DNA of 64,000 nucleotides from Podarcis muralis. Its lineage: Eukaryota. The notes below the pieces were generated by a model. The model did no database searches. It had not been told where the DNA came from and worked only from the letters and a program-made list of their open reading frames with translations. Where the stretch lies: assembly GCF_964188315.1 (NCBI RefSeq), contig NC_135667.1:25978001-26042000 (forward strand), written 5' to 3'. The position numbers were made by a program, and so were the translations under genes. This document shows positions 21,833-36,431 of the stretch, in pieces (the first letter of the stretch is position 1; each line of letters begins with the position of its first letter).

Positions 21833-22783
21833 TTATGGCTTCCGCAACAGGGTTTTCTTTAGTGCTTGTTTCACTTCATTGTTCCTGAGACAGTAAATAA
21901 TCGGGTTGCAAAGGGGGACTATGACAGCATAAAGAAGTGAAACAAGTTTGCTCGAATTGAGGGAGCTGATGGCCCTGGGGCGGGCATAGATGAAAATACT
22001 GGCAGAGTAGAAGATCACTACCACAGTGAGGTGAGATGCACAAGTGGAGAATGCTTTCTGGCGGCCTTTGGCTGAGGGAATGCGTAGGATGGTGGAGATG
22101 ATATAAATGTAGGACATGATGGTGACACAAAGGGGAGTCAGTAGGATAAACAAAGCTAATATGAAATCTGTCAGCTCAGACATGGACATATCAGTGCAAG
22201 ACAAGTTCAGAAGTGGGGATACATCACAGAAGAAGTGATTTATGATATTGGGACCACAGTATGTCAACTGAGATATTAGGAGGACTTTCCACGTTGAGAT
22301 GAAAAAGCCACTCATCCATGATCCAGCTGCCAGCTGGATACAGAGAGTTTGTGTCATGATTACCTGGTAGCGCAAAGGGTAGCAGATGGCAACGTAGCGG
22401 TCATAGGCCATGACGGCAAGGAGGACACACTCAGTGCAGCCCAATGCCAGGAAGAAATAGAGTTGCATCATGCATCCCACAAAGGAGATCAGATTGCTCT
22501 CTATCACAAAGTTCACCATAGCCTTTGGCAGGGTGACGGTGATGTACCAGATCTCTAAGAAGGACAAGTTCCACAGAAAGAAGTACATGGGAGTGTGGAG
22601 GTTGCTGTTCACCCAGACTGTCAGCATTATTATGACGTTCTCAGACAAAACCAAAATGTAGACAATGAGGAACAATGTGAAGAGCAAGATTTGGAATTCC
22701 AGGGGTGTTGGGAAGCCCAGAAGAATGAAATCTCTAACACTGGATTGGTTCTGTCTCTCCGTGACTGAATGCCTGTTCTGCAT
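21833..22783 (-). CDS. OR6A2: Olfactory receptor, OR6A2 / rat I7-like (start codon uncertain, see findings)
   Basis: All OR motifs present; recalled I7 hallmarks [64 protein letters not shown]. Confidence 0.9.
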
Positions 22784-22807
22784 AGAAAAAACACTTACAG
22801 TGATTAG
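22778..22807 (-). other. Splice acceptor with branch point in front of the OR6A2-like coding exon
   Basis: Minus strand ttttCTAATcactgtaagtgttttttctatgcAG; AG at 22779-22778, CTAAT at 22807-22803. Confidence 0.6.
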
Positions 22808-23348
22808 AAAAAGAACCCAGCACCCAAATTAGTTTTGTTTGTTTCAAAATATGAGGGGGTTTTTACAATCTAATTTTCTGGGACATCCAGTAGCTATAGC
22901 AAGCTTCCCTAGCCCCCACCTCAGTGCAGCTTAAGCAAAAAGTGATGCAGCTTGAGACAAACAAATCCTAATTTCACAACTCATAGGGTGGCCACACAGC
23001 CCTGGCCCAAAATGAGGATCAGTGTCATCAATGCAAAGTGAAAAGCCAGTGAGCCATGCATAAAAGCCACCTGTGCCTGACTCCCTCAGTCCAGTCGGCA
23101 GAAGAGCAAACCTTCTCTCCCCTCCCTTATATTTAAACATTTTTGTTGGTCACTTTTCATCTCTCCCAAATCCCTGCACTTCCAAATATATGCTCCGGAG
23201 AGTTGGCAGAGCTTCAAAATGTTGTGGGATGTAGTGCAGCAGGGTGCAAAGGAAAGGGGCAGTCACTGAAAATTGGCTTTTTCTCACCCCACTAGATCAA
23301 ATACCAGTCGGAGGTACTAACTAGATGTAACATGATAAAATAAGTAAT

Positions 23349-23380
<32 letters not shown>

Positions 23381-24405
23381 GAATCATTTATTTTCTGGGG
23401 AATAAGGAAAATATTTTTGAATAACACTGTTAGTGTAATCCTATGACTTGGAAGAAAGCCCTACAGAACACATAGCATGATTTACTTCCAAATTAACATG
23501 CATATGATTGTATGATTGTACTTTACAAGTTAAAAAGCCCCTTGTTCTCCAGGGGAGACTAGCATTTAAGAATAAAATTAAAAGCCCATGCTTCTCCAGG
23601 AAAAAAAGAAGTTATTGCTTTGTTTTTAATTTAGCCTTTCTATGGGACAGCACCAGCACTCCAGCGTTTCCATATATTTTTATCTGAGTACATTCATTTA
23701 ACTTGATGTAATGACTAGAATTGCTTCCATCCTGTGTAAGTCTATATACTGGGTTCAGTAGAAGTTTTTTTTTTTTTTTTTTTTTTTTTGTAGTTATGAA
23801 CTAAAGGTTGCAATGTCAATAGGTTAGATCCACAGAAAGATCTTCTGAATAATAAGAGTGTTTTAAAAAGCCCTGATGGATAAGAGCAAAGTCTTATTTC
23901 ATAATTTGTATAAATGCCCTTTCCTAAATAGATAAATAAATCTACTTTCCAAATAGCTTCTCATAATTTTCAGTGGCAAACAAGTGAAAAATGTTTGTTA
24001 TTTATTTAAAAGCATAAAAAACAAATTATTTATAATTTGATGAGTACAATGGTGTTCATGGTGTGCTGCAAAAGTATTGAATTTATTATATATTTTTGTT
24101 CTATTCTTCCTAGAAAACAAATATACATTTTTTTCCTTTATTTTCAGCAGTTTTATTACAAATTTTAAAATCTTGTTCTAATCAGTGTAAATAGTGCCAT
24201 ATGGCCTCTATATTGGAATAGATAGATATGAAGGTTGCTAAATTGGGAGAAAGTTCTACTGAACTCCATAGAACCCACTTTCTAGTAAATATACATACCG
24301 GTAATACAAACAGCATATTTGAAGCATTTTATATCATATTTGCATTTCACTTTATTTTCTCTAGTTGTACTTCTAAGTAACAAAGATCCATATCAGCACA
24401 CAAGG

Positions 24406-24414
24406 ACTTACCAT
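24406..24414 (-). other. Candidate splice donor directly preceded by ATG (gaaagcATG|GTAAGT)
   Basis: ATG at 24414-24412, consensus GTAAGT at 24411-24406; inference only. Confidence 0.45.
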
Positions 24415-25199
24415 GCTTTCCTTTGAAGGATCCTACCAAATCCAGATTTTGCATGGCAACAGTTGAAAAATGAGAAACCCTTTTCCTTTTTGGAGGATAG
24501 ATTGTAAATAAATCATTGCGCCAAAATTAAGTCTGCACTGGCAAAAAAATGTTTTCTGATTGGCAAGACTTGACTGTTTTCACCAACAGTCTGCAGTCTG
24601 CATTACAGATGAATGCAAAGCTTTTCCTGGTGGAGTAGATAGTCTATAGTGTCAAACAGTTTTATCCTGTACCAGTCTAAGATGCTGTATTAGATCACTG
24701 GGGGAAAGGCAAATGACATTTACTAAACATAGGCAACAACACTTTTGGGTTTCCAGGAAAGCTTGTAAAGTTTTTTTTCAAAGATATGGCGCATGGAAAT
24801 ATGCAATTAGGGCACTTCCAGCTGTCACTATTAAAGTTCAATTAAAGTTCATTTGATGTTCTTTGCAATGAACTCACTTTTGTTTTGCTTTTTTAAAAGG
24901 ACTTTAAAAGTGACAGGAAAACATACTGGAAAGTGTGGGATAACAATTGCTGAGTGCAATGTCTTATAACCTCCCTGCAAATAAATTGGCATGAATGTGA
25001 AATAAATACATGTGCAATGATGTCATCTAACCTCACTGCAGAACATGTGCAAAACAGACACTTCTCTGAAACCCTGAAGAGCTTCTGCTGGTCAATGGGG
25101 ATTGGTTTAATTTTAGTATAGTAATTTTTGATTATTATTTTAAAAATTCTTTTTTTCCCTTTTTGAATAGTTTGTGTAGTTTTTTATAGTTCTGTCTTA

Positions 25200-25990
25200 A
25201 AGGGAGAGGGTCAGGGCTGCCTGGGAGTGGGCCTCAGCCAACAGAATGGCTGAGGCAGGTTCCATGGGGGGCGGGGGGGATGCACTGGGACACCCGATCT
25301 CCGTGATCTCAGGTAGGAGGAGGAGTTATGCTAAGACCAGACCACGTCATTATCAAGGAGGCAGGTTTAGTCGTTGTTTGAAGACTATCCCTGCCTCTGG
25401 GCAACCTATTGGGAAGACCCAGTTCTCTGAGTGCATGTTCTGGAAGTTGGGCAGAGTGGTACATGCTTTGGTTATCTCCCGCTTGGACTACTGCAGTGCA
25501 CTCTATGTGGGACTACCTTTGAAGGTGACCCGGAAACTACAACTAATCCATAATGCGGCAGCTAGACTGGTGACTGGGAGCAGCCATCGAGACCACATAA
25601 CACCGGTCTTGAAAGACCTACATTGGCTCCCCATATGTTTCTGAGCACAATTCAAAGTGTTGGTGATAAAGCCCTAAATGGCTTCAGCCCAGTATACCTG
25701 AAGGAGCATCTCCACCCCCATCATTCTGCCTGGACACTGACGTCCAGTGCCGAGGGCCTTCTGGCGGTTCCCTCACTGCAAGAAGAAAAGTTACAGGGAA
25801 CCAGGCAGAGGGCCTTCTCGGTAGTGGTGGCCGCCCTGTGGAACGCCTTCCGATCAGATGTCAAAGAAATAAACAACTACCTGACGTTTAGACGACATCT
25901 GAAGGCAGCCCTGTTGATGTTTTAATGTACTTTTAAACTTTTGCTGAAAGCCACCCAGAGTAGCTGGGGAAACCCAGCAGGATTGGTGGC

Positions 25991-26024
<34 letters not shown>
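25200..26024 (+). mobile_element. L2-type LINE remnant (ORF2 C-terminus and 3' end, probably internally deleted), (AAT)n tail
   Basis: VVHALVISRLDYCSALYVGLP...NAAARLVTG...HITPVLKDLHWLPI translation; (AAT)n at about 25993-26024. Confidence 0.85.
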
Positions 26025-26025
<1 letters not shown>

Positions 26026-26225
26026 TGACAATATGAGCTAGTTGTACTGGTGCTCTAACTTAGTATAAGGCAGCTTGCTATTATATTTTTCTTTCACTAT
26101 ACATTGCACAGAAGATTTTACTGACTTGATTTTAATTCTTGTGAGCATCCCCCCATCTATTAAATAAATAAACACATACATGAACGTCAAAAATTTATTC
26201 ACTGGAAATAAGATGGACAATAGCG

Positions 26226-26269
<44 letters not shown>

Positions 26270-27351
26270 CCATCAACCTGAGATCACAAGGCAGATTGCA
26301 ACAATTAAAACACATTGTTAAAAACAGCTTAAAACAACTTCCAAAGGTTCTAAAAATATACATTTCAGGTGTGTCAGATTATCAGAAGGGGAAAACATGG
26401 ACTGAATCCTGTGCTTAGTGGTACTCAGAGTAGACCCATTGAAATTAATGGACATGGTTAACATAGGTAAAACTTGCTTAGCTAAAACTCACTGTTTCTT
26501 TTTTTGTTGACATACCACAATTGCTGGGATTTGTCTTTCAAGGAGGTGCAGAATATATCCAGCATTGCTGATTTTGCCATTTTATTTCAAGCATGTTCAT
26601 TTAATTAAATTTCTCCGCTATAAGACTCTGAAGTGTGTAACCCAAATTCAAAAACACTGGAGAACTGTTCAGGCATTCAGCCTGATCGTGCAAAGGCAAA
26701 GTGCATGCAGGGGGACACCACACCTGTCCCCATTTCCCTTGCACTGCCAGGTGTACCGCCTTTACCCCTGACTTTCAAAGATCTTAACAGTGCTTCTAAA
26801 TATGTTCAGCTGAATTTTCTTAGAAACCTCCTCATTACAATTTCCAGTTGTAAAGAGGCTTAAAAGTGAATCTAGCTGATTATGCTTAGGGCAACCTTCA
26901 TACCTTTCCAGCCAACACACAAAGATTGGGTACAACAACATGCCTAGTATTCAGGGGTTAAGGGTTGCAGTGTATTCCTATGTCCCACATACACATTTAG
27001 TCCTTATGTGATCAGGCTGAACACCCACATAAGGCATTATGATGCAATCCATACATTTCTACTTGTAAGTCCTACTGTGTTCAGTGGGGCTAGCTCTCAG
27101 GTAAGTTGGTATAGTCAATGGTCACAACATTGTAAATAATGAAACAGCATAAATGAGACAAACCAAGAGTAAGTTTGACAGAAGAGTTTTCAGAATGGCA
27201 AATGATCAAAACTTAAAATCAACCAGATCCCCATATCAAGTAGATTAAAAAGAAATCCCCTAGATGGGTATAGGACTGCAGCTTTCTTTTGTTTTCCACT
27301 ATCTAACAGTTTATGGTGTCCTGTATTCCAACACCCAACTTCATCAGTTCC

Positions 27352-28275
27352 TTAAACTGATAGAGTCTTCCTCAGTGCATCTTTTACTTCCTTATTCCTG
27401 AGGCAATATATTAGAGGGTTCAGAAGGGGCACTACTACAGTGTACAGCACTGACACCACTTTGTTGGAGTTGTAGGCATACATCGCTTTGGGCCGAGCGT
27501 AGGTGAAGAGTGTGGTAGAGTAGAACAGCACCACAACGGTGAGATGGGAACTGCAGGTGGAGAAAGCTTTCTTTCTGCCTTGAGCTGAAGGGATCTTCAA
27601 CACCGTTGAGATGATATAGATGTAGGACAGCACAACAACACAGAGTGGGACCATGATAACCATAAGAGCTAGGATAAAATCTGCCAGCTCAGCCATGGAA
27701 GAATCTGTGCAGGATACATTCAAGAGAGGTGAAATGTCACAGAAATAGTGGTTGATCTTGTCAGTGCCACAGTATTTCAGCCGACCAATGAAGCTAAGCT
27801 TGATTGCAGAGGTAATTAAGCCGCACGTCCAGCATCCCGCTGAGAGCCGAGCACATAAACTATTACTCATGATAGCTGGATACCGCAGTGGGTAGCAGAT
27901 GGCCAAATACCGGTCATAAGCCATAACAGCCAGAAGGATGTATTCAGTGCACACAAATGTGACAAAGAAATACAGTTGTGTCAAGCAGCCTTGGAAGGAG
28001 ATACGCTTGTCTTGTGTGAGGAAATCTGCCAGCATCTTAGGGACAATGATTGTGACATACCAGAATTCAAGGAAAGAGAGGTTGCACAGAAAGTAGTACA
28101 TGGGCTTGTGAAGGCTGTTGTTCAGCCAAACAACTATGATGATGATGAGATTTTCCAGTAGGGTCAGCAGGTAGCTAAGTATGAACAGGACAAAAAGAAG
28201 AATCTGAAGCTCTGCAGCGCTGGGAAATCCCAGAAGGATGAAATAGGGGACATTTGTCTGGTTGGTTTCTTCCAT
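27352..28275 (-). CDS. OR6Y1: Olfactory receptor, OR6Y1-like, 307 aa
   Basis: Intact OR motifs; recalled OR6Y1 signatures [57 protein letters not shown]. Confidence 0.95.
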
Positions 28276-31200
28276 TCTTGAATGCAGGGTACTTGCAAGA
28301 ACAAGAAGGAAGAGATGTCATACAGCATCTATTAACCCCCTTTTTTTGCACCTTAAAAATACATAATAATGATGATCAGTGCTTTTTCTCTAGAAAAATA
28401 GGTGCCAGTACTCACCATGAAGTTGTTATAGTAAGTCTCACACTTTTTAACAATAAAAAGAGTTGTCAGTACTGCGTACCCTTGAGTACCCCCTGGGGGA
28501 AAAAACACATTGATGATATCAATAATATTAAACCTTTCATGCATATAACCCATTTTGATTAAAAACAAAAAAGTACTAAAAGCTGGTAAATAATTCTGCT
28601 GTGTATTTATTTATTACTTATACTGGGAAGTGGGGGTAGATAAATCTCTCAATTTAAATTTACCTATCTTTTCTCCCACCCACTCCACTTTAATTCTCCA
28701 CATTTCTATATCACTTTGAAGGACTGTGAGGAAGGTAAGGCTGAGAGGCAGGTCATGGCTGAACATCACCCAAAGCACTTCATGCCCAAGGTGGGATATG
28801 AAACCTGGTTTCCCAGAGCCTAGTCCCTGATAAACCACACTGGCTCCCACACTGTACTAGTTTGATATATGTATGTGTGTGGGGGTTTGGATTGCAGCCT
28901 AATACTGTAAAACTTAGGGCACTTACAGCCTGTTGCTGTTTTGGGTTGGCATTCAATGACAAACCAACATACTCAGGTTGTACAATTGAAATGGATATGC
29001 GGTTGCACTGCTGCACAACAAGCCTTCTAGCCTCCAAGATCAGACTTGCTGCAATAAGGAAAGCAGCGGGAAAATGCACTCAGAATCGTGAAATAAGACT
29101 TGTTTGAGGCAATGTGGCATAGCACCCCCACAAACAAATCAGAATCAATGCTCAGCAAATTGCTGATGCAATCAAAACTCCATGCAAATTTTGTGGCGGG
29201 GAGAAGGGGATGAATGCTTAATAAACAGGTCACCTGAAAGTTACCTTTCTTTTGGAATAAATTATGTTGAAACCATCAGGATTTTCTCCCACGTAAGTCT
29301 GTCTCTGAGTGCAAAGTTGGAACTGGCTCTGTTGCATTCATAAATCAGTTTTTAGTCAAGCCCCATCACAGTTTACTATAGAACCAAGGAGAATTTCAGA
29401 GGGGAAAATGTGCTTTGTTGTTGTTGCCCACAACAAAATAAATCTCATCCAAATTTCTCCCCAGATTCCAGAGTTTCAATTACTTGGCCTTGTTCCAAAT
29501 GTGTACACCAAGTACTATGCATTTCTGAGGACTGGCCACGTTGACTGGGACTGATGGGAGTTGGAACCCAACAATATCTGAAAGGTCATGGGTTCCCCAT
29601 TCTTACACTACACTATACCAGCTAAACTGCATCGACATCAGCAGACATTATTTGAATGGGCATAAAAATACTAAGCAAATGCATTTACTGTGTTTAGCTT
29701 CTCTAGCCTATCTGTGCCTGAACTATCTTAATATATGCATATGCAGGTATAAATTTCCTGTAGCTTATATTTAATAACCAATCAAAACATTATGCACAGA
29801 TTTGTAGAAGTAAAGAATGCAATTCACCTATTATGTGTCCAGGTAAGTTTTTTGCCTCCGTGTTCATATGCAGCTGCATACAAAGAACTTCTATTAAATA
29901 GATTTCTTCCACTGTGGCCATGTGCATGTCCCACCTTGGGACTAGGCCTGAAAATCAGCAGTTCCCTCCCAAGGGTAGTAGCCTCAGAAGATATCTCCCC
30001 ACCACTCCCTCATTCCAGTCATATTCTTCCCTTTTTCTTCCTTCCTTGTAATTTATAACTGAGTTTAGAGATCACAGCTGTAAGGGGGGGGGGTACAACT
30101 AGACCATGGAAAAGATAGCACTGATTTAACACAAGGACATATCATAAAAATGCATTGTCTAAATAAAAATAATCTAAGATATTGACAACTTTATAAAAAT
30201 GGTGGATTTTTAAGACTGCAGTGTTCTCAGTTTTTCCACATCTAAAAAAGAATAAAACACATTCATAAAATAAAACTCAGTTGCTTAAAGGGGACATCTT
30301 ACATCAAGTCAGAGCAATCAGGTTATTGGCAGCTTCTTTTGAAACTGGCAGTGAGCAGTGTTTGTATTAATTCAGCATTCCATGCTCCTCAGCTTGATCC
30401 TCATCAGCTACTGACTCATGTCCAACAAGGCTTGTTTTCAGCCTGAGTCCCAGCAGTTGGTTTCAGGTTACCTCCCCACCACCAATAATTCTTCTGGCAT
30501 TGTAGTGGGGAACCTCAAACCCTTCAATCCTCTCCACTTGGTCTTCAGAACTATGACCATCCCTTGAGTTGTGAAGAGACTTCTTGCTTGCCTGGATGAA
30601 GAGTGGTCTCTGTGTGACCATACCCACTTCTGCCTCGTCCACAATTTGTATACAACCTATAGAAGGCAGCCTATCGGGAACACTACTTAGTGATTTTGGC
30701 AATTAATTGGTATATAAAATAAACAAACAAACAACCAAACATGCATCTCAGGCTGAAAATGGTTTTCCTCACTTTTGTAAGATAATCATGTCTCCCTCTT
30801 AAAATTGATTCTTTCCCAGCTGCCACCCCAACTGTCATCTCAGGTTCTACACTTCTGTTAAGAGTCTGCCAGACTGAAAGCTGCACCTGAGGGGTGGGGA
30901 GTGCACACTGAAGGAGAAGGGAGGGTTTTTAGGTGGGGAGCAGGATTTAGCTTCAATAAGCTGCACTTAATGTTCCCCACTCCCTCCAAGCCTGATGACC
31001 ACAGAAGGGTGGCTGAGCAGATTCAGGGGGCTGTGGAGATGGTTGCAGGGTGGGGGACATGCCACTTTTTTGCCTTTAGCTGCAAGTGCTGGTCCTGTGG
31101 CATGGACAAATTGATTGAAGGACACTAAGAGGTGCCTGAGCCTAGAGAGGGAGCTAGTTGTCTAGGGAATGGCCCACTGGCCAGCCAGTTTTGAGGGGCA

Positions 31201-35160: not shown

Positions 35161-35471
35161 TTCCCACCATTCCTCAACTGCAGCCCCCTGAATCCACTTC
35201 CAAAAGCAGGTTTAAATGCCCTCTTAGCCTGTGGAACCACATTTTGGGAAGTGGATGCAGATGTGGAGGGAAAGAGCAGAAGTACGTTCAACTTTTGCCA
35301 CTGTATTTGTTGTGAGGTATGTCATCACAATGTGGTTTGTCCTGTTCTTTCATGTATTCTGCCTTGTATTTTTAATACATTAAAATGATGTGTTGTTTTG
35401 CTAGCATAATCACCATCCACATCTTAGCATGCTTTTGTTTACTCATTGTTCTTCAGGTCATTAGATCAGGC

Positions 35472-36431
35472 ATGAAGCTGGAAAACCAGACCAGAGTCCA
35501 GGAGTTTATTCTCCTTGGTTTCCCTACTGCCATAGAATTTCAAATACTGCTCTTTGTAATATTCCTTGTTATTTACATCCTGACCCTCCTCGAGAACATT
35601 GTGATCATCACTCTGATCAGGACAAACAGCCATCTCCAAAAACCTATGTACTTTTTCCTTAGCCACCTGTCTTTCCTGGAGACCTGGTACATTTCTGTGA
35701 CTGTTCCCAAGCTCCTGGTTAACTTCCTAGCAAAGAACAAAAGCATTTCCTTTGAAGGCTGCATGGCCCAGCTCTACTTTTTCATATCCCTAGTCTGCAC
35801 TGAGTGTGTCCTCTTGGCTGTCATGGCTTATGATCGCTACATCGCCATCTGCAACCCACTGCGCTACCCAGTCATTATGAATTCCCGGCTCTGTTTGCAG
35901 TTAGCTGTGGGATCTTGGCTTGCTGGTTTCCTAATCTCAATGCTGAAAGTCTTCTTCATTTCCCGCTTGAGTTTCTGTGGACCCAACATCATCAACCATT
36001 TCTTCTGTGACATCTCACCTCTGCTGAACCTCTCCTGCACGGACAGAACTGTAGCTGAGATGGTGGACTTTGTATTTGCCCTCCTTATCCTTATAATCCC
36101 ACTGTCTGTCACTATTGGTTCCTATGTGTGCATAATAGGCACCATTTTGCGTATCCCCACAGCCAAGGGGAAAAGAAAAGCCTTTTCCACCTGTGCCTCA
36201 CACCTCACTGTGGTTATTATTTTCTACTCAGCCACTCTCTTCATGTATGCCCGACCAAGAAGAATCCATTCTTTTAATCTCAATAAGCTTGTGTCCATTG
36301 TATACACTATTGTCACCCCGATGTTGAATCCATGCATTTACTGCCTCAGGAATCAAGATGTGAAGGAAGCCATGAAAAAGATATTTTGTAGCAGGAATGC
36401 TGAAACCACGGTTACCACCAGTGACCATTAG
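35472..36431 (+). CDS. OR6B1: Olfactory receptor, OR6B1-like, 319 aa (MKLENQT...)
   Basis: [10 protein letters not shown]-terminus, [48 protein letters not shown]; acceptor gttcttcAG at 35455-35456 lies between the ORF-track start and ATG 35472. Confidence 0.93.

What the first reader, a model, noticed from the sequence alone, without database searches (positions are those of the whole stretch)
22760..24420. I7/OR6A2-like receptor has ACG at its ancestral start, and an upstream ATG|GT exon could supply an in-frame start
Seen: the minus strand reads ttctATGCAG|AAC AGG CAT TCA GTC ACG GAG AGA CAG AAC CAA TCC. ACG-GAG-AGA-CAG-AAC (22762) aligns with the MERRN start of rat I7 (recalled) and has strong Kozak context (gtcACGg), so the original ATG appears to have become ACG. 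The ORF-track ATG (22783) sits inside a textbook acceptor (branch point CTAAT, T-tract, CAG at 22780-22778) and would be spliced out. The next in-frame Met is residue 53 of the ORF, which would remove most of TM1. A consensus donor 1.6 kb upstream, gaaagcATG|GTAAGT (24414-24406), would join to exon start 22777 exactly in frame, giving [13 protein letters not shown] (315 aa). Inference: the gene may be rescued by a start codon from a normally non-coding 5' exon, may use non-AUG initiation, or may be a cryptic pseudogene. Coding OR 5' exons are uncommon.
Basis: partly seen in the sequence, partly recalled or inferred. Interest (0 to 1): 0.78.

Follow-up and report, generated by a model that had tools for sequence, protein, structure and literature searches.

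The report
Lizard smell receptor with two-exon start
A wall-lizard olfactory receptor gene lost its usual start codon, stayed under strong selection, and most likely starts translation from an ancient ATG at the end of a small upstream exon; this gene layout is already known in mammals.

Summary
The minus-strand OR6A2/OR226-like gene (ORF 21833-22783) has ACG (22762-22760) where non-lacertid orthologues (geckos, Hemicordylus, Elgaria, alligator) have the MERQNQS start. All five lacertid sequences share the ACG, so it is not an assembly error.

The acceptor TTTCTATGCAG| and the 15-nt spacer are conserved from geckos to lacertids. The ATG at 22783 is an old part of that acceptor; it is GTG in Zootoca and Lacerta.

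TGGTAAGT is invariant, and every join is in frame.

The exon-1 ATG therefore predates the loss. The ancestral mRNA carried two in-frame AUGs 18 nt apart. Lacertids lost the second, and Hemicordylus lost the first (GTG).

Codon ML gives omega 0.19 within lacertids (p = 1.6e-9 against 1), which rejects a clade-wide pseudogene. P. raffonei alone has a 0.6-kb deletion of the 5' coding end.

No transcript evidence was obtainable: three RNA runs gave zero depth. Split OR genes are described in mammals (Barnes 2020), and this scan already noted them in other clusters of this genome. This is a new member of a known kind, and it corrects inconsistent RefSeq models.

The parts
21833..22777 (-). Exon 2: main coding exon of an OR6A2/OR226-like olfactory receptor. 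It holds 5 spacer codons, 309 codons from ACG, and the TAA stop at 21835-21833.
   Evidence: ORF list. Pfam 7tm_4 E 1.5e-50. Orthologues at 85-96% identity. Omega 0.19 within lacertids.
22760..22762 (-). ACG codon at the position of the ancestral exon-2 start ATG (context gtcACGg).
   Evidence: Aligned to ATG in Elgaria, Hemicordylus, Heteronotia and Paroedura. ACG in P. muralis, P. lilfordi, a Logan Podarcis contig, Zootoca and L. agilis.
22778..22807 (-). Splice acceptor: branch-point-like CTAAT (22807-22803), pyrimidine tract and CAG (22780-22778). It contains the ATG 22783-22781 that opens the mechanical ORF.
   Evidence: The 16 nt before exon 2 are identical in Elgaria and Paroedura and 15/16 in lacertids. 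The ATG is GTG in Zootoca and L. agilis and CAT-CAG in Hemicordylus. Three window paralogues have acceptors 4-17 nt before their ATG.
22778..24411 (-). Proposed intron, 1634 nt (GT..AG).
   Evidence: Sequence. Homologous introns of 1.7-4.3 kb in other squamates. Variable columns 11.6% against 5.4% in the CDS, and 33 small indels among lacertids.
24406..24414 (-). Last codon of exon 1, ATG (24414-24412), and the donor GTAAGT (24411-24406).
   Evidence: TGGTAAGT is invariant in 7 squamate sequences. ATG is present in all but Hemicordylus (GTG). A at -3 of the ATG is invariant.
24415..24454 (-). Body of exon 1; its 5' end is unknown. It holds an in-frame stop TAG at 24435-24433 upstream of the exon-1 ATG, and an out-of-frame uATG at 24454-24452.
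   Evidence: Sequence. The uATG is conserved in Podarcis, L. agilis, Elgaria, Hemicordylus and Paroedura, and is AAG in Zootoca.
24385..24784 (-). Conserved upstream island: candidate promoter plus exon 1.
   Evidence: blastn to Elgaria upstream DNA, E 2.7e-20, colinear. An nhmmer profile of lacertids plus Elgaria finds Hemicordylus (E 9e-16) and Paroedura (E 2e-7), and both matches end at the donor.

Best explanation
This is a functional class II (family 6, OR6A2/OR226-like) olfactory receptor gene of a lacertid lizard, most likely Podarcis muralis. Its coding sequence spans two exons. A short upstream exon ends in ATG (24414-24412) followed by a consensus donor GTAAGT. A 1634-nt intron is removed at the conserved acceptor CAG (22780-22778). 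The ATG joins in frame to AAC AGG CAT TCA GTC ACG GAG..., giving a 315-aa receptor that begins [13 protein letters not shown]. This arrangement is ancestral to squamates. The ancestral mRNA carried two in-frame AUGs 18 nt apart, one at the end of exon 1 and the classical one in exon 2. In the lacertid ancestor the exon-2 AUG mutated to ACG, which was tolerated because the exon-1 AUG already initiated translation. In Hemicordylus the reverse happened: exon-1 ATG became GTG and the exon-2 ATG was kept. The ATG at 22783 is part of the acceptor and is removed with the intron. Shown here: the ATG loss, its age, the conservation of the splice sites and the frame, and purifying selection after the loss. 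Inferred only: that these two sites are spliced to each other in olfactory neurons, and that ribosomes start at the exon-1 AUG.
For:: non-lacertid orthologues start MERQNQS, and lacertids have T at that position. ACG is present in 5 lacertid sequences from 4 species, the acceptor block and the exact 15-nt spacer are conserved from geckos to lacertids, and ATG 22783 is absent in Zootoca, L. agilis and Hemicordylus; the upstream island is conserved in Elgaria (E 2.7e-20), Hemicordylus (E 9e-16) and Paroedura (E 2e-7). TGGTAAGT is invariant, A at -3 of the exon-1 ATG is invariant, and all joins are in frame without stops; using 4-fold sites as a rough neutral proxy, 8 of 8 invariant donor bases has P about 7e-4, and 16/16 acceptor identity between Elgaria and Paroedura has P about 3e-3; omega in the lacertid crown is 0.19, the LRT against omega = 1 is 36.3 (p = 1.6e-9), and it is not different from background 0.107 (p = 0.08); there are no indels in the spacer plus first 45 codons, against about 4 expected from the intron indel rate (P about 0.017). 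(PMC7055050): mammalian OR loci lacking a conserved start ATG recover it in the upstream exon and are expressed like coding ORs; uORFs occur in 55-86% of OR mRNAs. RefSeq models in Zootoca and L. agilis (three models) enter the same acceptor. The truncated P. raffonei model uses this very donor but a different acceptor, because that species has the deletion.
Against: There is no transcript evidence. Three bulk RNA runs of the species gave zero depth over 21894-25045, with unknown tissues and only 12% of reads sampled. The transcription start is unknown. If it lies upstream of 24454, the uATG (gccATGc) opens a 28-codon uORF that overlaps the proposed start in another frame. The exon-1 ATG is not universal (GTG in Hemicordylus). 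The -1 G, and in part the -3 A, would be conserved for splicing alone. Within lacertids the ATG's conservation carries no statistical weight because the species are too close. Codons 2-45 show 5 synonymous and 7 non-synonymous changes in lacertids, which is not distinguishable from neutrality on its own. The RefSeq models themselves disagree on the upstream exon.
Confidence: 0.6

Rival explanations
1. Near-cognate initiation: the receptor is translated mainly from the ACG at 22762-22760, which has an optimal context (G at -3, G at +4). The exon-1 AUG is bypassed, or absent from the real transcript.
For: The context gtcACGg is inherited from the ancestral gccATGg and is kept in all lacertids. 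The gene is under purifying selection, so some start before TM1 must exist. That ACG in good context can initiate at low efficiency is established knowledge, not tested here.
Against: If the conserved donor and acceptor are used, a scanning ribosome meets an in-frame AUG with A at -3 only 18 nt earlier. Non-AUG starts are weak. No data here show initiation at the ACG.
Confidence: 0.1
2. In Podarcis the start is the ATG at 22783, as in the current RefSeq model (316 aa, single exon), because a share of transcripts begin inside the intron or retain it.
For: The ATG is present and in frame in P. muralis, P. lilfordi and the Logan Podarcis contig. RefSeq XP_028560082.1 uses it. OR genes often have several 5' isoforms (PMC7055050).
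Against: The ATG lies at positions -6 to -4 of an acceptor conserved for the whole squamate radiation. It is GTG in Zootoca and L. agilis, whose genes are equally constrained, and it is disrupted in Hemicordylus. It therefore cannot be the shared lacertid solution. Its presence in Podarcis is retention of acceptor sequence.
Confidence: 0.12
3. The locus is a dying or non-functional gene in P. muralis (a cryptic pseudogene), or it makes only a TM1-less product from Met53.
For: The classical start is lost. P. raffonei has deleted about 603 bp, including the acceptor and about 60 codons. No RNA reads were found. Codons 2-45 have a raised pN/pS of 0.4-1.2 in lacertid pairs, from small counts.
Against: The 309-codon ORF is intact in four lacertid species. 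Omega is 0.19 in the crown, p = 1.6e-9 against neutrality, and it is not different from lineages that keep the ATG. There are no indels where about 4, or about 26 over the whole CDS, are expected. The N-terminal non-synonymous changes are conservative (V/I, I/M, S/P, Q/R). N-terminus plus TM1 also has 2-3 times higher pN/pS in lineages that keep the ATG.
Confidence: 0.1
4. A different upstream exon supplies the start, as in the RefSeq models for Zootoca (MNTI| at the homologue of window ~24059, or ...QNLGL| using donor TTG|GTAGGA at 24437/24436) or L. agilis (a 33-codon exon).
For: These models exist and are in frame. In P. muralis ATG CAA AAT CTG GAT TTG|GTAGGA would also join in frame.
Against: None of these donors is conserved outside lacertids. 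GTAGGA is ATGGAA in Elgaria and Paroedura. The MNTI exon is not alignable in Elgaria and its donor GTACTC is weak. The L. agilis donor lies beside a block of sequence that the window lacks. Each species' model uses a different exon, which is what an automatic search for any ATG would produce.
Confidence: 0.08

Closest known systems
Split (two-exon coding) olfactory receptor genes of mouse and human (Barnes et al. 2020, BMC Genomics 21:196, PMC7055050). Their first class comprises loci called pseudogenes for lack of a conserved start ATG, which is recovered in the upstream exon.
   Same: The main exon lacks the family's start ATG. An upstream exon ends with or contains an ATG that joins in frame within the extracellular N-terminus. 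The intron, 1.6 kb, is within the reported range (550-22628 bp). The start and the junction are conserved in orthologues. Purifying selection is evident.
   Different: This is a squamate, not a mammal. Only the ATG itself lies in exon 1 (phase-0 intron directly after the start codon). No RNA-seq support is available here, whereas the mammalian set required it. The ancestral state had both AUGs, and different lineages lost different ones.
Two-exon OR genes noted earlier by this scan in other clusters of the same genome (s1-188867, s1-172992).
   Same: A small upstream exon ends in a start codon and is spliced in frame to the OR exon, and the layout is shared from geckos to lacertids.
   Different: Those notes do not mention loss of the exon-2 ATG. 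Here the exon-2 ATG is lost in a whole family of lizards, which makes the upstream ATG obligatory rather than optional. I did not re-test those loci.
Rat I7 (Olr226) / mouse Olfr2 / human OR6A2 group
   Same: NCBI names the lizard orthologues OR6A2-like or olfactory receptor 226-like. Mammalian OR6A2/226 proteins are 65-69% identical over 96% of the length. The N-terminal MERxN...EF(I/V)LLGFP pattern matches.
   Different: One-to-one orthology with the mammalian gene was not tested. The tight orthologue group (78-96% identity) contains only squamates and alligator.

Membership tests
Vertebrate class II olfactory receptor (7tm_4) | Significant match to the OR-specific 7TM profile over its full length | tested here: met
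   PF13853 7tm_4 E 1.5e-50, profile positions 1-280 of 280.
Vertebrate class II olfactory receptor (7tm_4) | OR signature motifs ([19 protein letters not shown], NPxIY) and an N-terminal N-x-S/T glycosylation site | tested here: met
   All are present in the translation: [29 protein letters not shown] and NQS.
Split (two-exon CDS) OR gene, after Barnes et al. 2020 | The main exon lacks the conserved initiation ATG | tested here: met
   ACG sits where 8 non-lacertid orthologues have ATG.
Split (two-exon CDS) OR gene, after Barnes et al. 2020 | An ATG in an upstream exon joins in frame to give a full-length ORF | tested here: met
   ATG|GTAAGT ... CAG|AAC joins in frame, with an in-frame TAG 21 nt upstream of the ATG, giving 315 aa.
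Split (two-exon CDS) OR gene, after Barnes et al. 2020 | Initiation Met and splice junction conserved in orthologues | tested here: met
   The donor is invariant in 7 sequences, the acceptor and 15-nt spacer are conserved, and the ATG is present in lacertids, Elgaria and 2 geckos. The exception is Hemicordylus, which has GTG.
Split (two-exon CDS) OR gene, after Barnes et al. 2020 | The junction is supported by transcript reads and expression is like coding ORs | tested here: inconclusive
   Three RNA runs of the species gave zero depth on the gene. The tissue is unknown and about 12% of each run was read. No olfactory-tissue run was offered.
OR pseudogene | Disrupted reading frame or neutral evolution (omega about 1) | tested here: not met
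   The 309-codon ORF is intact in 4 lacertid species. Omega is 0.19, p = 1.6e-9 against 1. This is met only in P. raffonei, through a deletion.
Non-AUG (near-cognate) initiated protein | Near-cognate codon in strong Kozak context with no usable upstream in-frame AUG | tested here: not met
   The context is strong (G at -3, G at +4), but a conserved in-frame AUG lies 18 nt upstream in the predicted spliced mRNA.
Non-AUG (near-cognate) initiated protein | Direct evidence of initiation at the near-cognate codon | not testable with these tools
   This needs ribosome profiling or N-terminal proteomics.

The most novel reading that the evidence does not exclude
Start-codon turnover in a conserved two-exon olfactory receptor. 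For about 200 million years the mRNA carried two redundant in-frame AUGs, one formed by the last three bases of exon 1 and one in exon 2. Squamate lineages have lost one or the other reciprocally: lacertids lost the exon-2 AUG (now ACG) and Hemicordylus lost the exon-1 AUG (now GTG). Genome-only OR surveys that require an ATG in the main exon would therefore misclassify or mis-start such genes across reptiles.
Probability: 0.5. Interest if true: 0.5.

Novelty: new member of a known kind. Interest (0 to 1): 0.4.

Why it matters
First, it settles an annotation problem. RefSeq gives this one orthologue five different predicted N-termini across four lacertid species (MQNRHSV, MNTI-NRHSV, a 27-residue leader, a 33-residue leader, and a truncated chimera), plus a partial record in P. 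lilfordi. One conserved two-exon model, [13 protein letters not shown], fits P. muralis, P. lilfordi, Zootoca and L. agilis.

Second, it extends the split-OR layout, described from mouse and human transcript data, to squamates. The extension rests on comparative evidence alone. It also gives a natural experiment in which loss of the exon-2 ATG makes the exon-1 ATG obligatory.

Third, it is a caution for OR repertoire counts. Pipelines that demand an ATG in the single coding exon would call this gene a pseudogene or give it a false start.

It does not reveal a new mechanism.

Tried and rejected
1. RNA evidence. The only RNA runs offered for the species (three bulk runs laid; the single-cell runs were not used because 3'-biased reads cannot show a 5' junction) gave no reads on the gene. 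The junction is therefore neither confirmed nor refuted.

2. A selection test on the N-terminal 44 codons alone, meant to exclude a Met53 start. There were only 12 changes (5 synonymous, 7 non-synonymous), binomial p = 0.11, so the test lacks power. It was replaced by an indel-absence argument.

3. The alligator orthologue (L012). No homologue of exon 1 was found within 10 kb, and the acceptor region differs and carries an in-frame TAG. The layout could not be extended beyond squamates.

4. A search for paralogous copies of the exon-1 island elsewhere in the window found none.

5. The bacterial-type promoter/terminator scan is irrelevant to a vertebrate gene and was ignored.

6. The alternative RefSeq upstream exons were examined and judged lineage-specific.

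7. Only a 36-nt junction was translated locally to check the frame.

Full report
WHAT IS THERE. The window is an olfactory receptor (OR) cluster with at least eight intact OR-like ORFs. The gene in question is the minus-strand ORF 21833-22783 (316 aa). It gives a full-length match to the OR profile 7tm_4 (E 1.5e-50). Its exact protein is on record from an NCBI genome on a 59.6-Mb contig. It clusters at more than 90% identity with RefSeq proteins of Podarcis muralis, P. raffonei, P. lilfordi, Lacerta agilis and Zootoca vivipara. The window is therefore lacertid, most likely P. muralis.

CHECK OF THE OBSERVATION.
- The ORF's ATG is at 22783-22781 and is immediately followed by CAG (22780-22778).
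- Exon 2 would begin at 22777.
- ACG is at 22762-22760 in the context gtcACGg.
- A CTAAT lies 26 nt before the AG.
- gaaagcATG|GTAAGT is at 24414-24406.
- The next in-frame Met of the ORF is residue 53.

The closest non-lacertid orthologues are Elgaria (91%), Hemicordylus (89%), four gecko species (85-88%) and Alligator sinensis (78%). They begin MERQNQS, MEKQNQS, MDRQNQS or MERTNQS, while every lacertid protein has ...[12 protein letters not shown]. At the DNA level the ACG aligns to their ATG. The ACG is present in P. muralis, P. lilfordi (L006), a Logan Podarcis contig (L005), Zootoca (L001) and L. agilis (L002). A contig from an independent DNA run of the species shows no listed difference there. 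It is therefore a fixed change that predates the split of Podarcis, Lacerta and Zootoca, not an assembly error or a minor allele.

THE ACCEPTOR AND THE ATG AT 22783. The 16 nt before exon 2 (TGTTGTTTCTATGCAG) are identical in Elgaria and the gecko Paroedura, and 15/16 in lacertids and Heteronotia. A YTAAY branch-point-like motif lies at the same distance. The spacer between the AG and the ancestral ATG is exactly 15 nt, without stops, in all eight species. Sequence further upstream is not alignable between the deep lineages. Using 4-fold degenerate sites of the same gene as a rough neutral yardstick (69% identity between Elgaria and Paroedura), 16/16 has P of about 3e-3. Three paralogues in the window also have strong acceptors 4-17 nt before their ATG. 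The acceptor is therefore a constrained, real element.

The ATG inside the acceptor is old: it is present in geckos, Elgaria and Podarcis. It is GTG in Zootoca and L. agilis and disrupted (CAT-CAG) in Hemicordylus. It behaves as acceptor sequence, not as a start codon, and it cannot be how lacertids in general start this protein.

THE UPSTREAM EXON. A sensitive comparison of the whole upstream intergenic region with Elgaria found two colinear conserved islands: 24784-24385 (E 2.7e-20) and 24242-24102 (E 1e-14). In the alignment of five lacertids and Elgaria, ATGGTAAGT is invariant. The homologous exon was then found in three more species:
- Heteronotia...AAAAAATG|GTAAGT, about 4 kb upstream.
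- Paroedura...AACAATG|GTAAGT.
- Hemicordylus...AAAAGTG|GTAAGT.

A profile built only from lacertids and Elgaria finds the Hemicordylus and Paroedura regions at E 9e-16 and 2e-7, and both matches end at the donor. Across the seven sequences TGGTAAGT is invariant. The base at -3 of the ATG is always A although -1, -2 and -4 vary, and indels occur just upstream. Eight invariant bases have P of about 7e-4 against the 4-fold-site yardstick.

In every species the join of the last exon-1 codon to exon 2 is in frame and stop-free:
- Lacertids: M-NRHS(V/I)-TERQNQ.
- Elgaria: M-DIHSA-MERQNQ.
- Geckos: M-NTPST-M(E/D)RQNQ.
- Hemicordylus: V-NLSSA-MEKQNQ.

In P. muralis an in-frame TAG lies 21 nt upstream of the exon-1 ATG, so this ATG is the only candidate in that frame.

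IS THE GENE ALIVE? From ACG to TAA the ORF is 309 codons and intact in P. muralis, P. lilfordi, the Logan contig, Zootoca and L. agilis. I fitted a branch codon model (GY94-type, F3x4, 9 sequences, my own implementation). It gives omega 0.19 on the branches within the lacertid crown, all of which postdate the ATG loss. Fixing omega at 1 is rejected (LRT 36.3, p = 1.6e-9). The crown omega is not significantly different from the background omega of 0.107 (p = 0.08).

Among four lacertids, the CDS has 5.4% variable columns against 11.6% in the intron. The intron has 33 small indel events per 1215 ungapped columns. The CDS has none where about 26 would be expected. The spacer plus first 45 codons also have none, against about 4 expected (P about 0.017).

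There is one weakness. Taken alone, codons 2-45 (N-terminus and TM1) have 5 synonymous and 7 non-synonymous changes in lacertids, which is not distinguishable from neutrality. However, the replacements are conservative (V/I, I/M, S/P, Q/R). This segment also has 2-3 times higher pN/pS than the rest in lineages that keep the ATG. A clade-wide cryptic pseudogene is therefore rejected. A TM1-less product from Met53 is unlikely but not formally excluded.

The exception is P. raffonei. Its assembly lacks window positions ~23201-22599, a clean deletion with a few bases of microhomology that removes the acceptor and about 60 codons.

MOST LIKELY MECHANISM. The gene is a two-exon-coding OR. Exon 1 contributes only the initiator ATG, a phase-0 intron of 1634 nt is removed, and exon 2 supplies the remaining 314 codons. 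Because geckos and Elgaria already have the in-frame exon-1 ATG, the ancestral mRNA had two AUGs 18 nt apart. The first has A at -3 in all species, and the second sits in gccATGg. Loss of the second in lacertids (Met to Thr at residue 7) and loss of the first in Hemicordylus (ATG to GTG) look like reciprocal losses of redundant starts. This is an inference from seven sequences, not a demonstrated fact.

WHAT IS NOT SHOWN. There is no transcript evidence. The runs offered for this species comprised four DNA-like holders (kind not on record), six raw-read RNA runs, and ten small runs guessed to be RNA that held next to none of the sampled words. The three bulk RNA runs I laid gave zero depth between 21894 and 25045, and reads only on repeats. 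That is expected for a non-olfactory tissue and says nothing about splicing.

The transcription start is unknown. If it lies upstream of 24454, an out-of-frame uATG (gccATGc) would open a 28-codon uORF that overlaps the proposed start. This uATG is conserved in most species but is AAG in Zootoca. Such uORFs are the rule in OR mRNAs (55% of human and 86% of mouse, PMC7055050), so this does not disqualify the model, but it would lower translation. Initiation at the ACG, or at ATG 22783 from unspliced transcripts in Podarcis, remains possible as a minor or alternative route.

COMPARISON WITH WHAT IS KNOWN. Barnes et al. 2020 (PMC7055050) describe 41 mouse and 13 human OR genes whose coding region is split across two exons. 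[quoted passage not shown] Their introns (550-22628 bp) fall in the N-terminus or TM1, the junctions are conserved, and expression matches that of coding ORs. They note that cases with very short upstream coding parts were rejected for lack of alignable sequence. The present gene is exactly such a case and meets their sequence criteria, but their transcript criterion could not be tested. Earlier notes of this scan (s1-188867, s1-172992) report the same layout in other OR clusters of this genome. I did not re-test them.

ANNOTATION CONSEQUENCE. RefSeq models for this orthologue disagree:
- P. muralis: single exon from ATG 22783.
- Zootoca: MNTI|NRHSV, using a weak GTACTC donor that is not conserved in Elgaria.
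- An older Zootoca model: a 27-residue leader, using TTG|GTAGGA.
- L. agilis: a 33-codon leader whose donor lies beside sequence that the window lacks.
- P. raffonei: a truncated chimera that uses the conserved donor.
- P. lilfordi: a partial record, although the ORF is intact.

The three Zootoca and L. agilis models enter the same acceptor. The single model M-NRHS(V/I)-TERQNQS fits P. muralis, P. lilfordi, Zootoca and L. agilis.

VERDICT. This is a new member of a known kind, with a modestly interesting twist (start-codon turnover between exons) and practical value for annotation. Interest 0.4.

Noticed in passing
L003:7425-7525 (P. raffonei), corresponding to window ~23201-22599: The P. raffonei orthologue carries a clean deletion of about 603 bp with short microhomology. 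It removes the acceptor, the ACG and about 60 codons. RefSeq XP_053218553.1 (270 aa, MQNLDLVGSFKGKH...) is a chimeric model that uses the conserved exon-1 donor. The gene is probably dead in that species or individual.
   Followed up: yes
window 24102-24242 (-): A second island inside the intron is conserved with Elgaria (E 1e-14), with the core TACACTGATTAGAACA...CTGCTGAAAAT. It shows no conserved splice signals. It may be a regulatory element. Its function is unknown.
   Followed up: partly
window 24447-24460 (-): The motif GTTGCCATGCAAAAT, which contains the uATG 24454-24452, is conserved from Paroedura to lacertids (AAG in Zootoca). The frame of the uATG relative to the exon-1 ATG differs between species, so it may be conserved as a DNA or promoter element (it looks X-box-like or octamer-like) rather than as a codon.
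   Followed up: no
window 28410-28418 (-) and 28276-28300 (-): The neighbouring paralogue (ORF 27352-28275) also has ATG|GTGAGT about 140 nt upstream of its start, and an acceptor (ttcttgcaag|) 17 nt before the ATG. That join would be out of frame, making it a possible uORF, or the match may be chance.
   Followed up: no
window 35457-35476 (+): The paralogue at 35385-36431 has the acceptor ttcttcag| exactly 15 nt, in frame and stop-free, before its family-typical ATG (MKLENQT). This is the same geometry as the studied gene and is worth checking for a split start.
   Followed up: no
window 25243-26030 and 26425-26621: RNA reads from all three bulk runs pile up here with many mismatches and loose ends, and the DNA word depth is enormous. 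These are expressed interspersed repeats, not transcripts of the OR gene.
   Followed up: no
window 23776-23800 and 23337-23388 (-): The proposed intron contains an A-run of about 24 nt and a (TTGA)n microsatellite. Lacertid species differ by TE-sized insertions here: the intron is 1634 nt in P. muralis, 2515 in P. lilfordi, 2039 in Zootoca and 1736 in L. agilis.
   Followed up: partly
L004:6001-6963 (Elgaria): The genomic ORF of the Elgaria orthologue runs 321 codons, whereas the RefSeq protein has 309 aa with a different C-terminal end and a gene span of 2.5 kb. The model seems to splice off the last codons.
   Followed up: no
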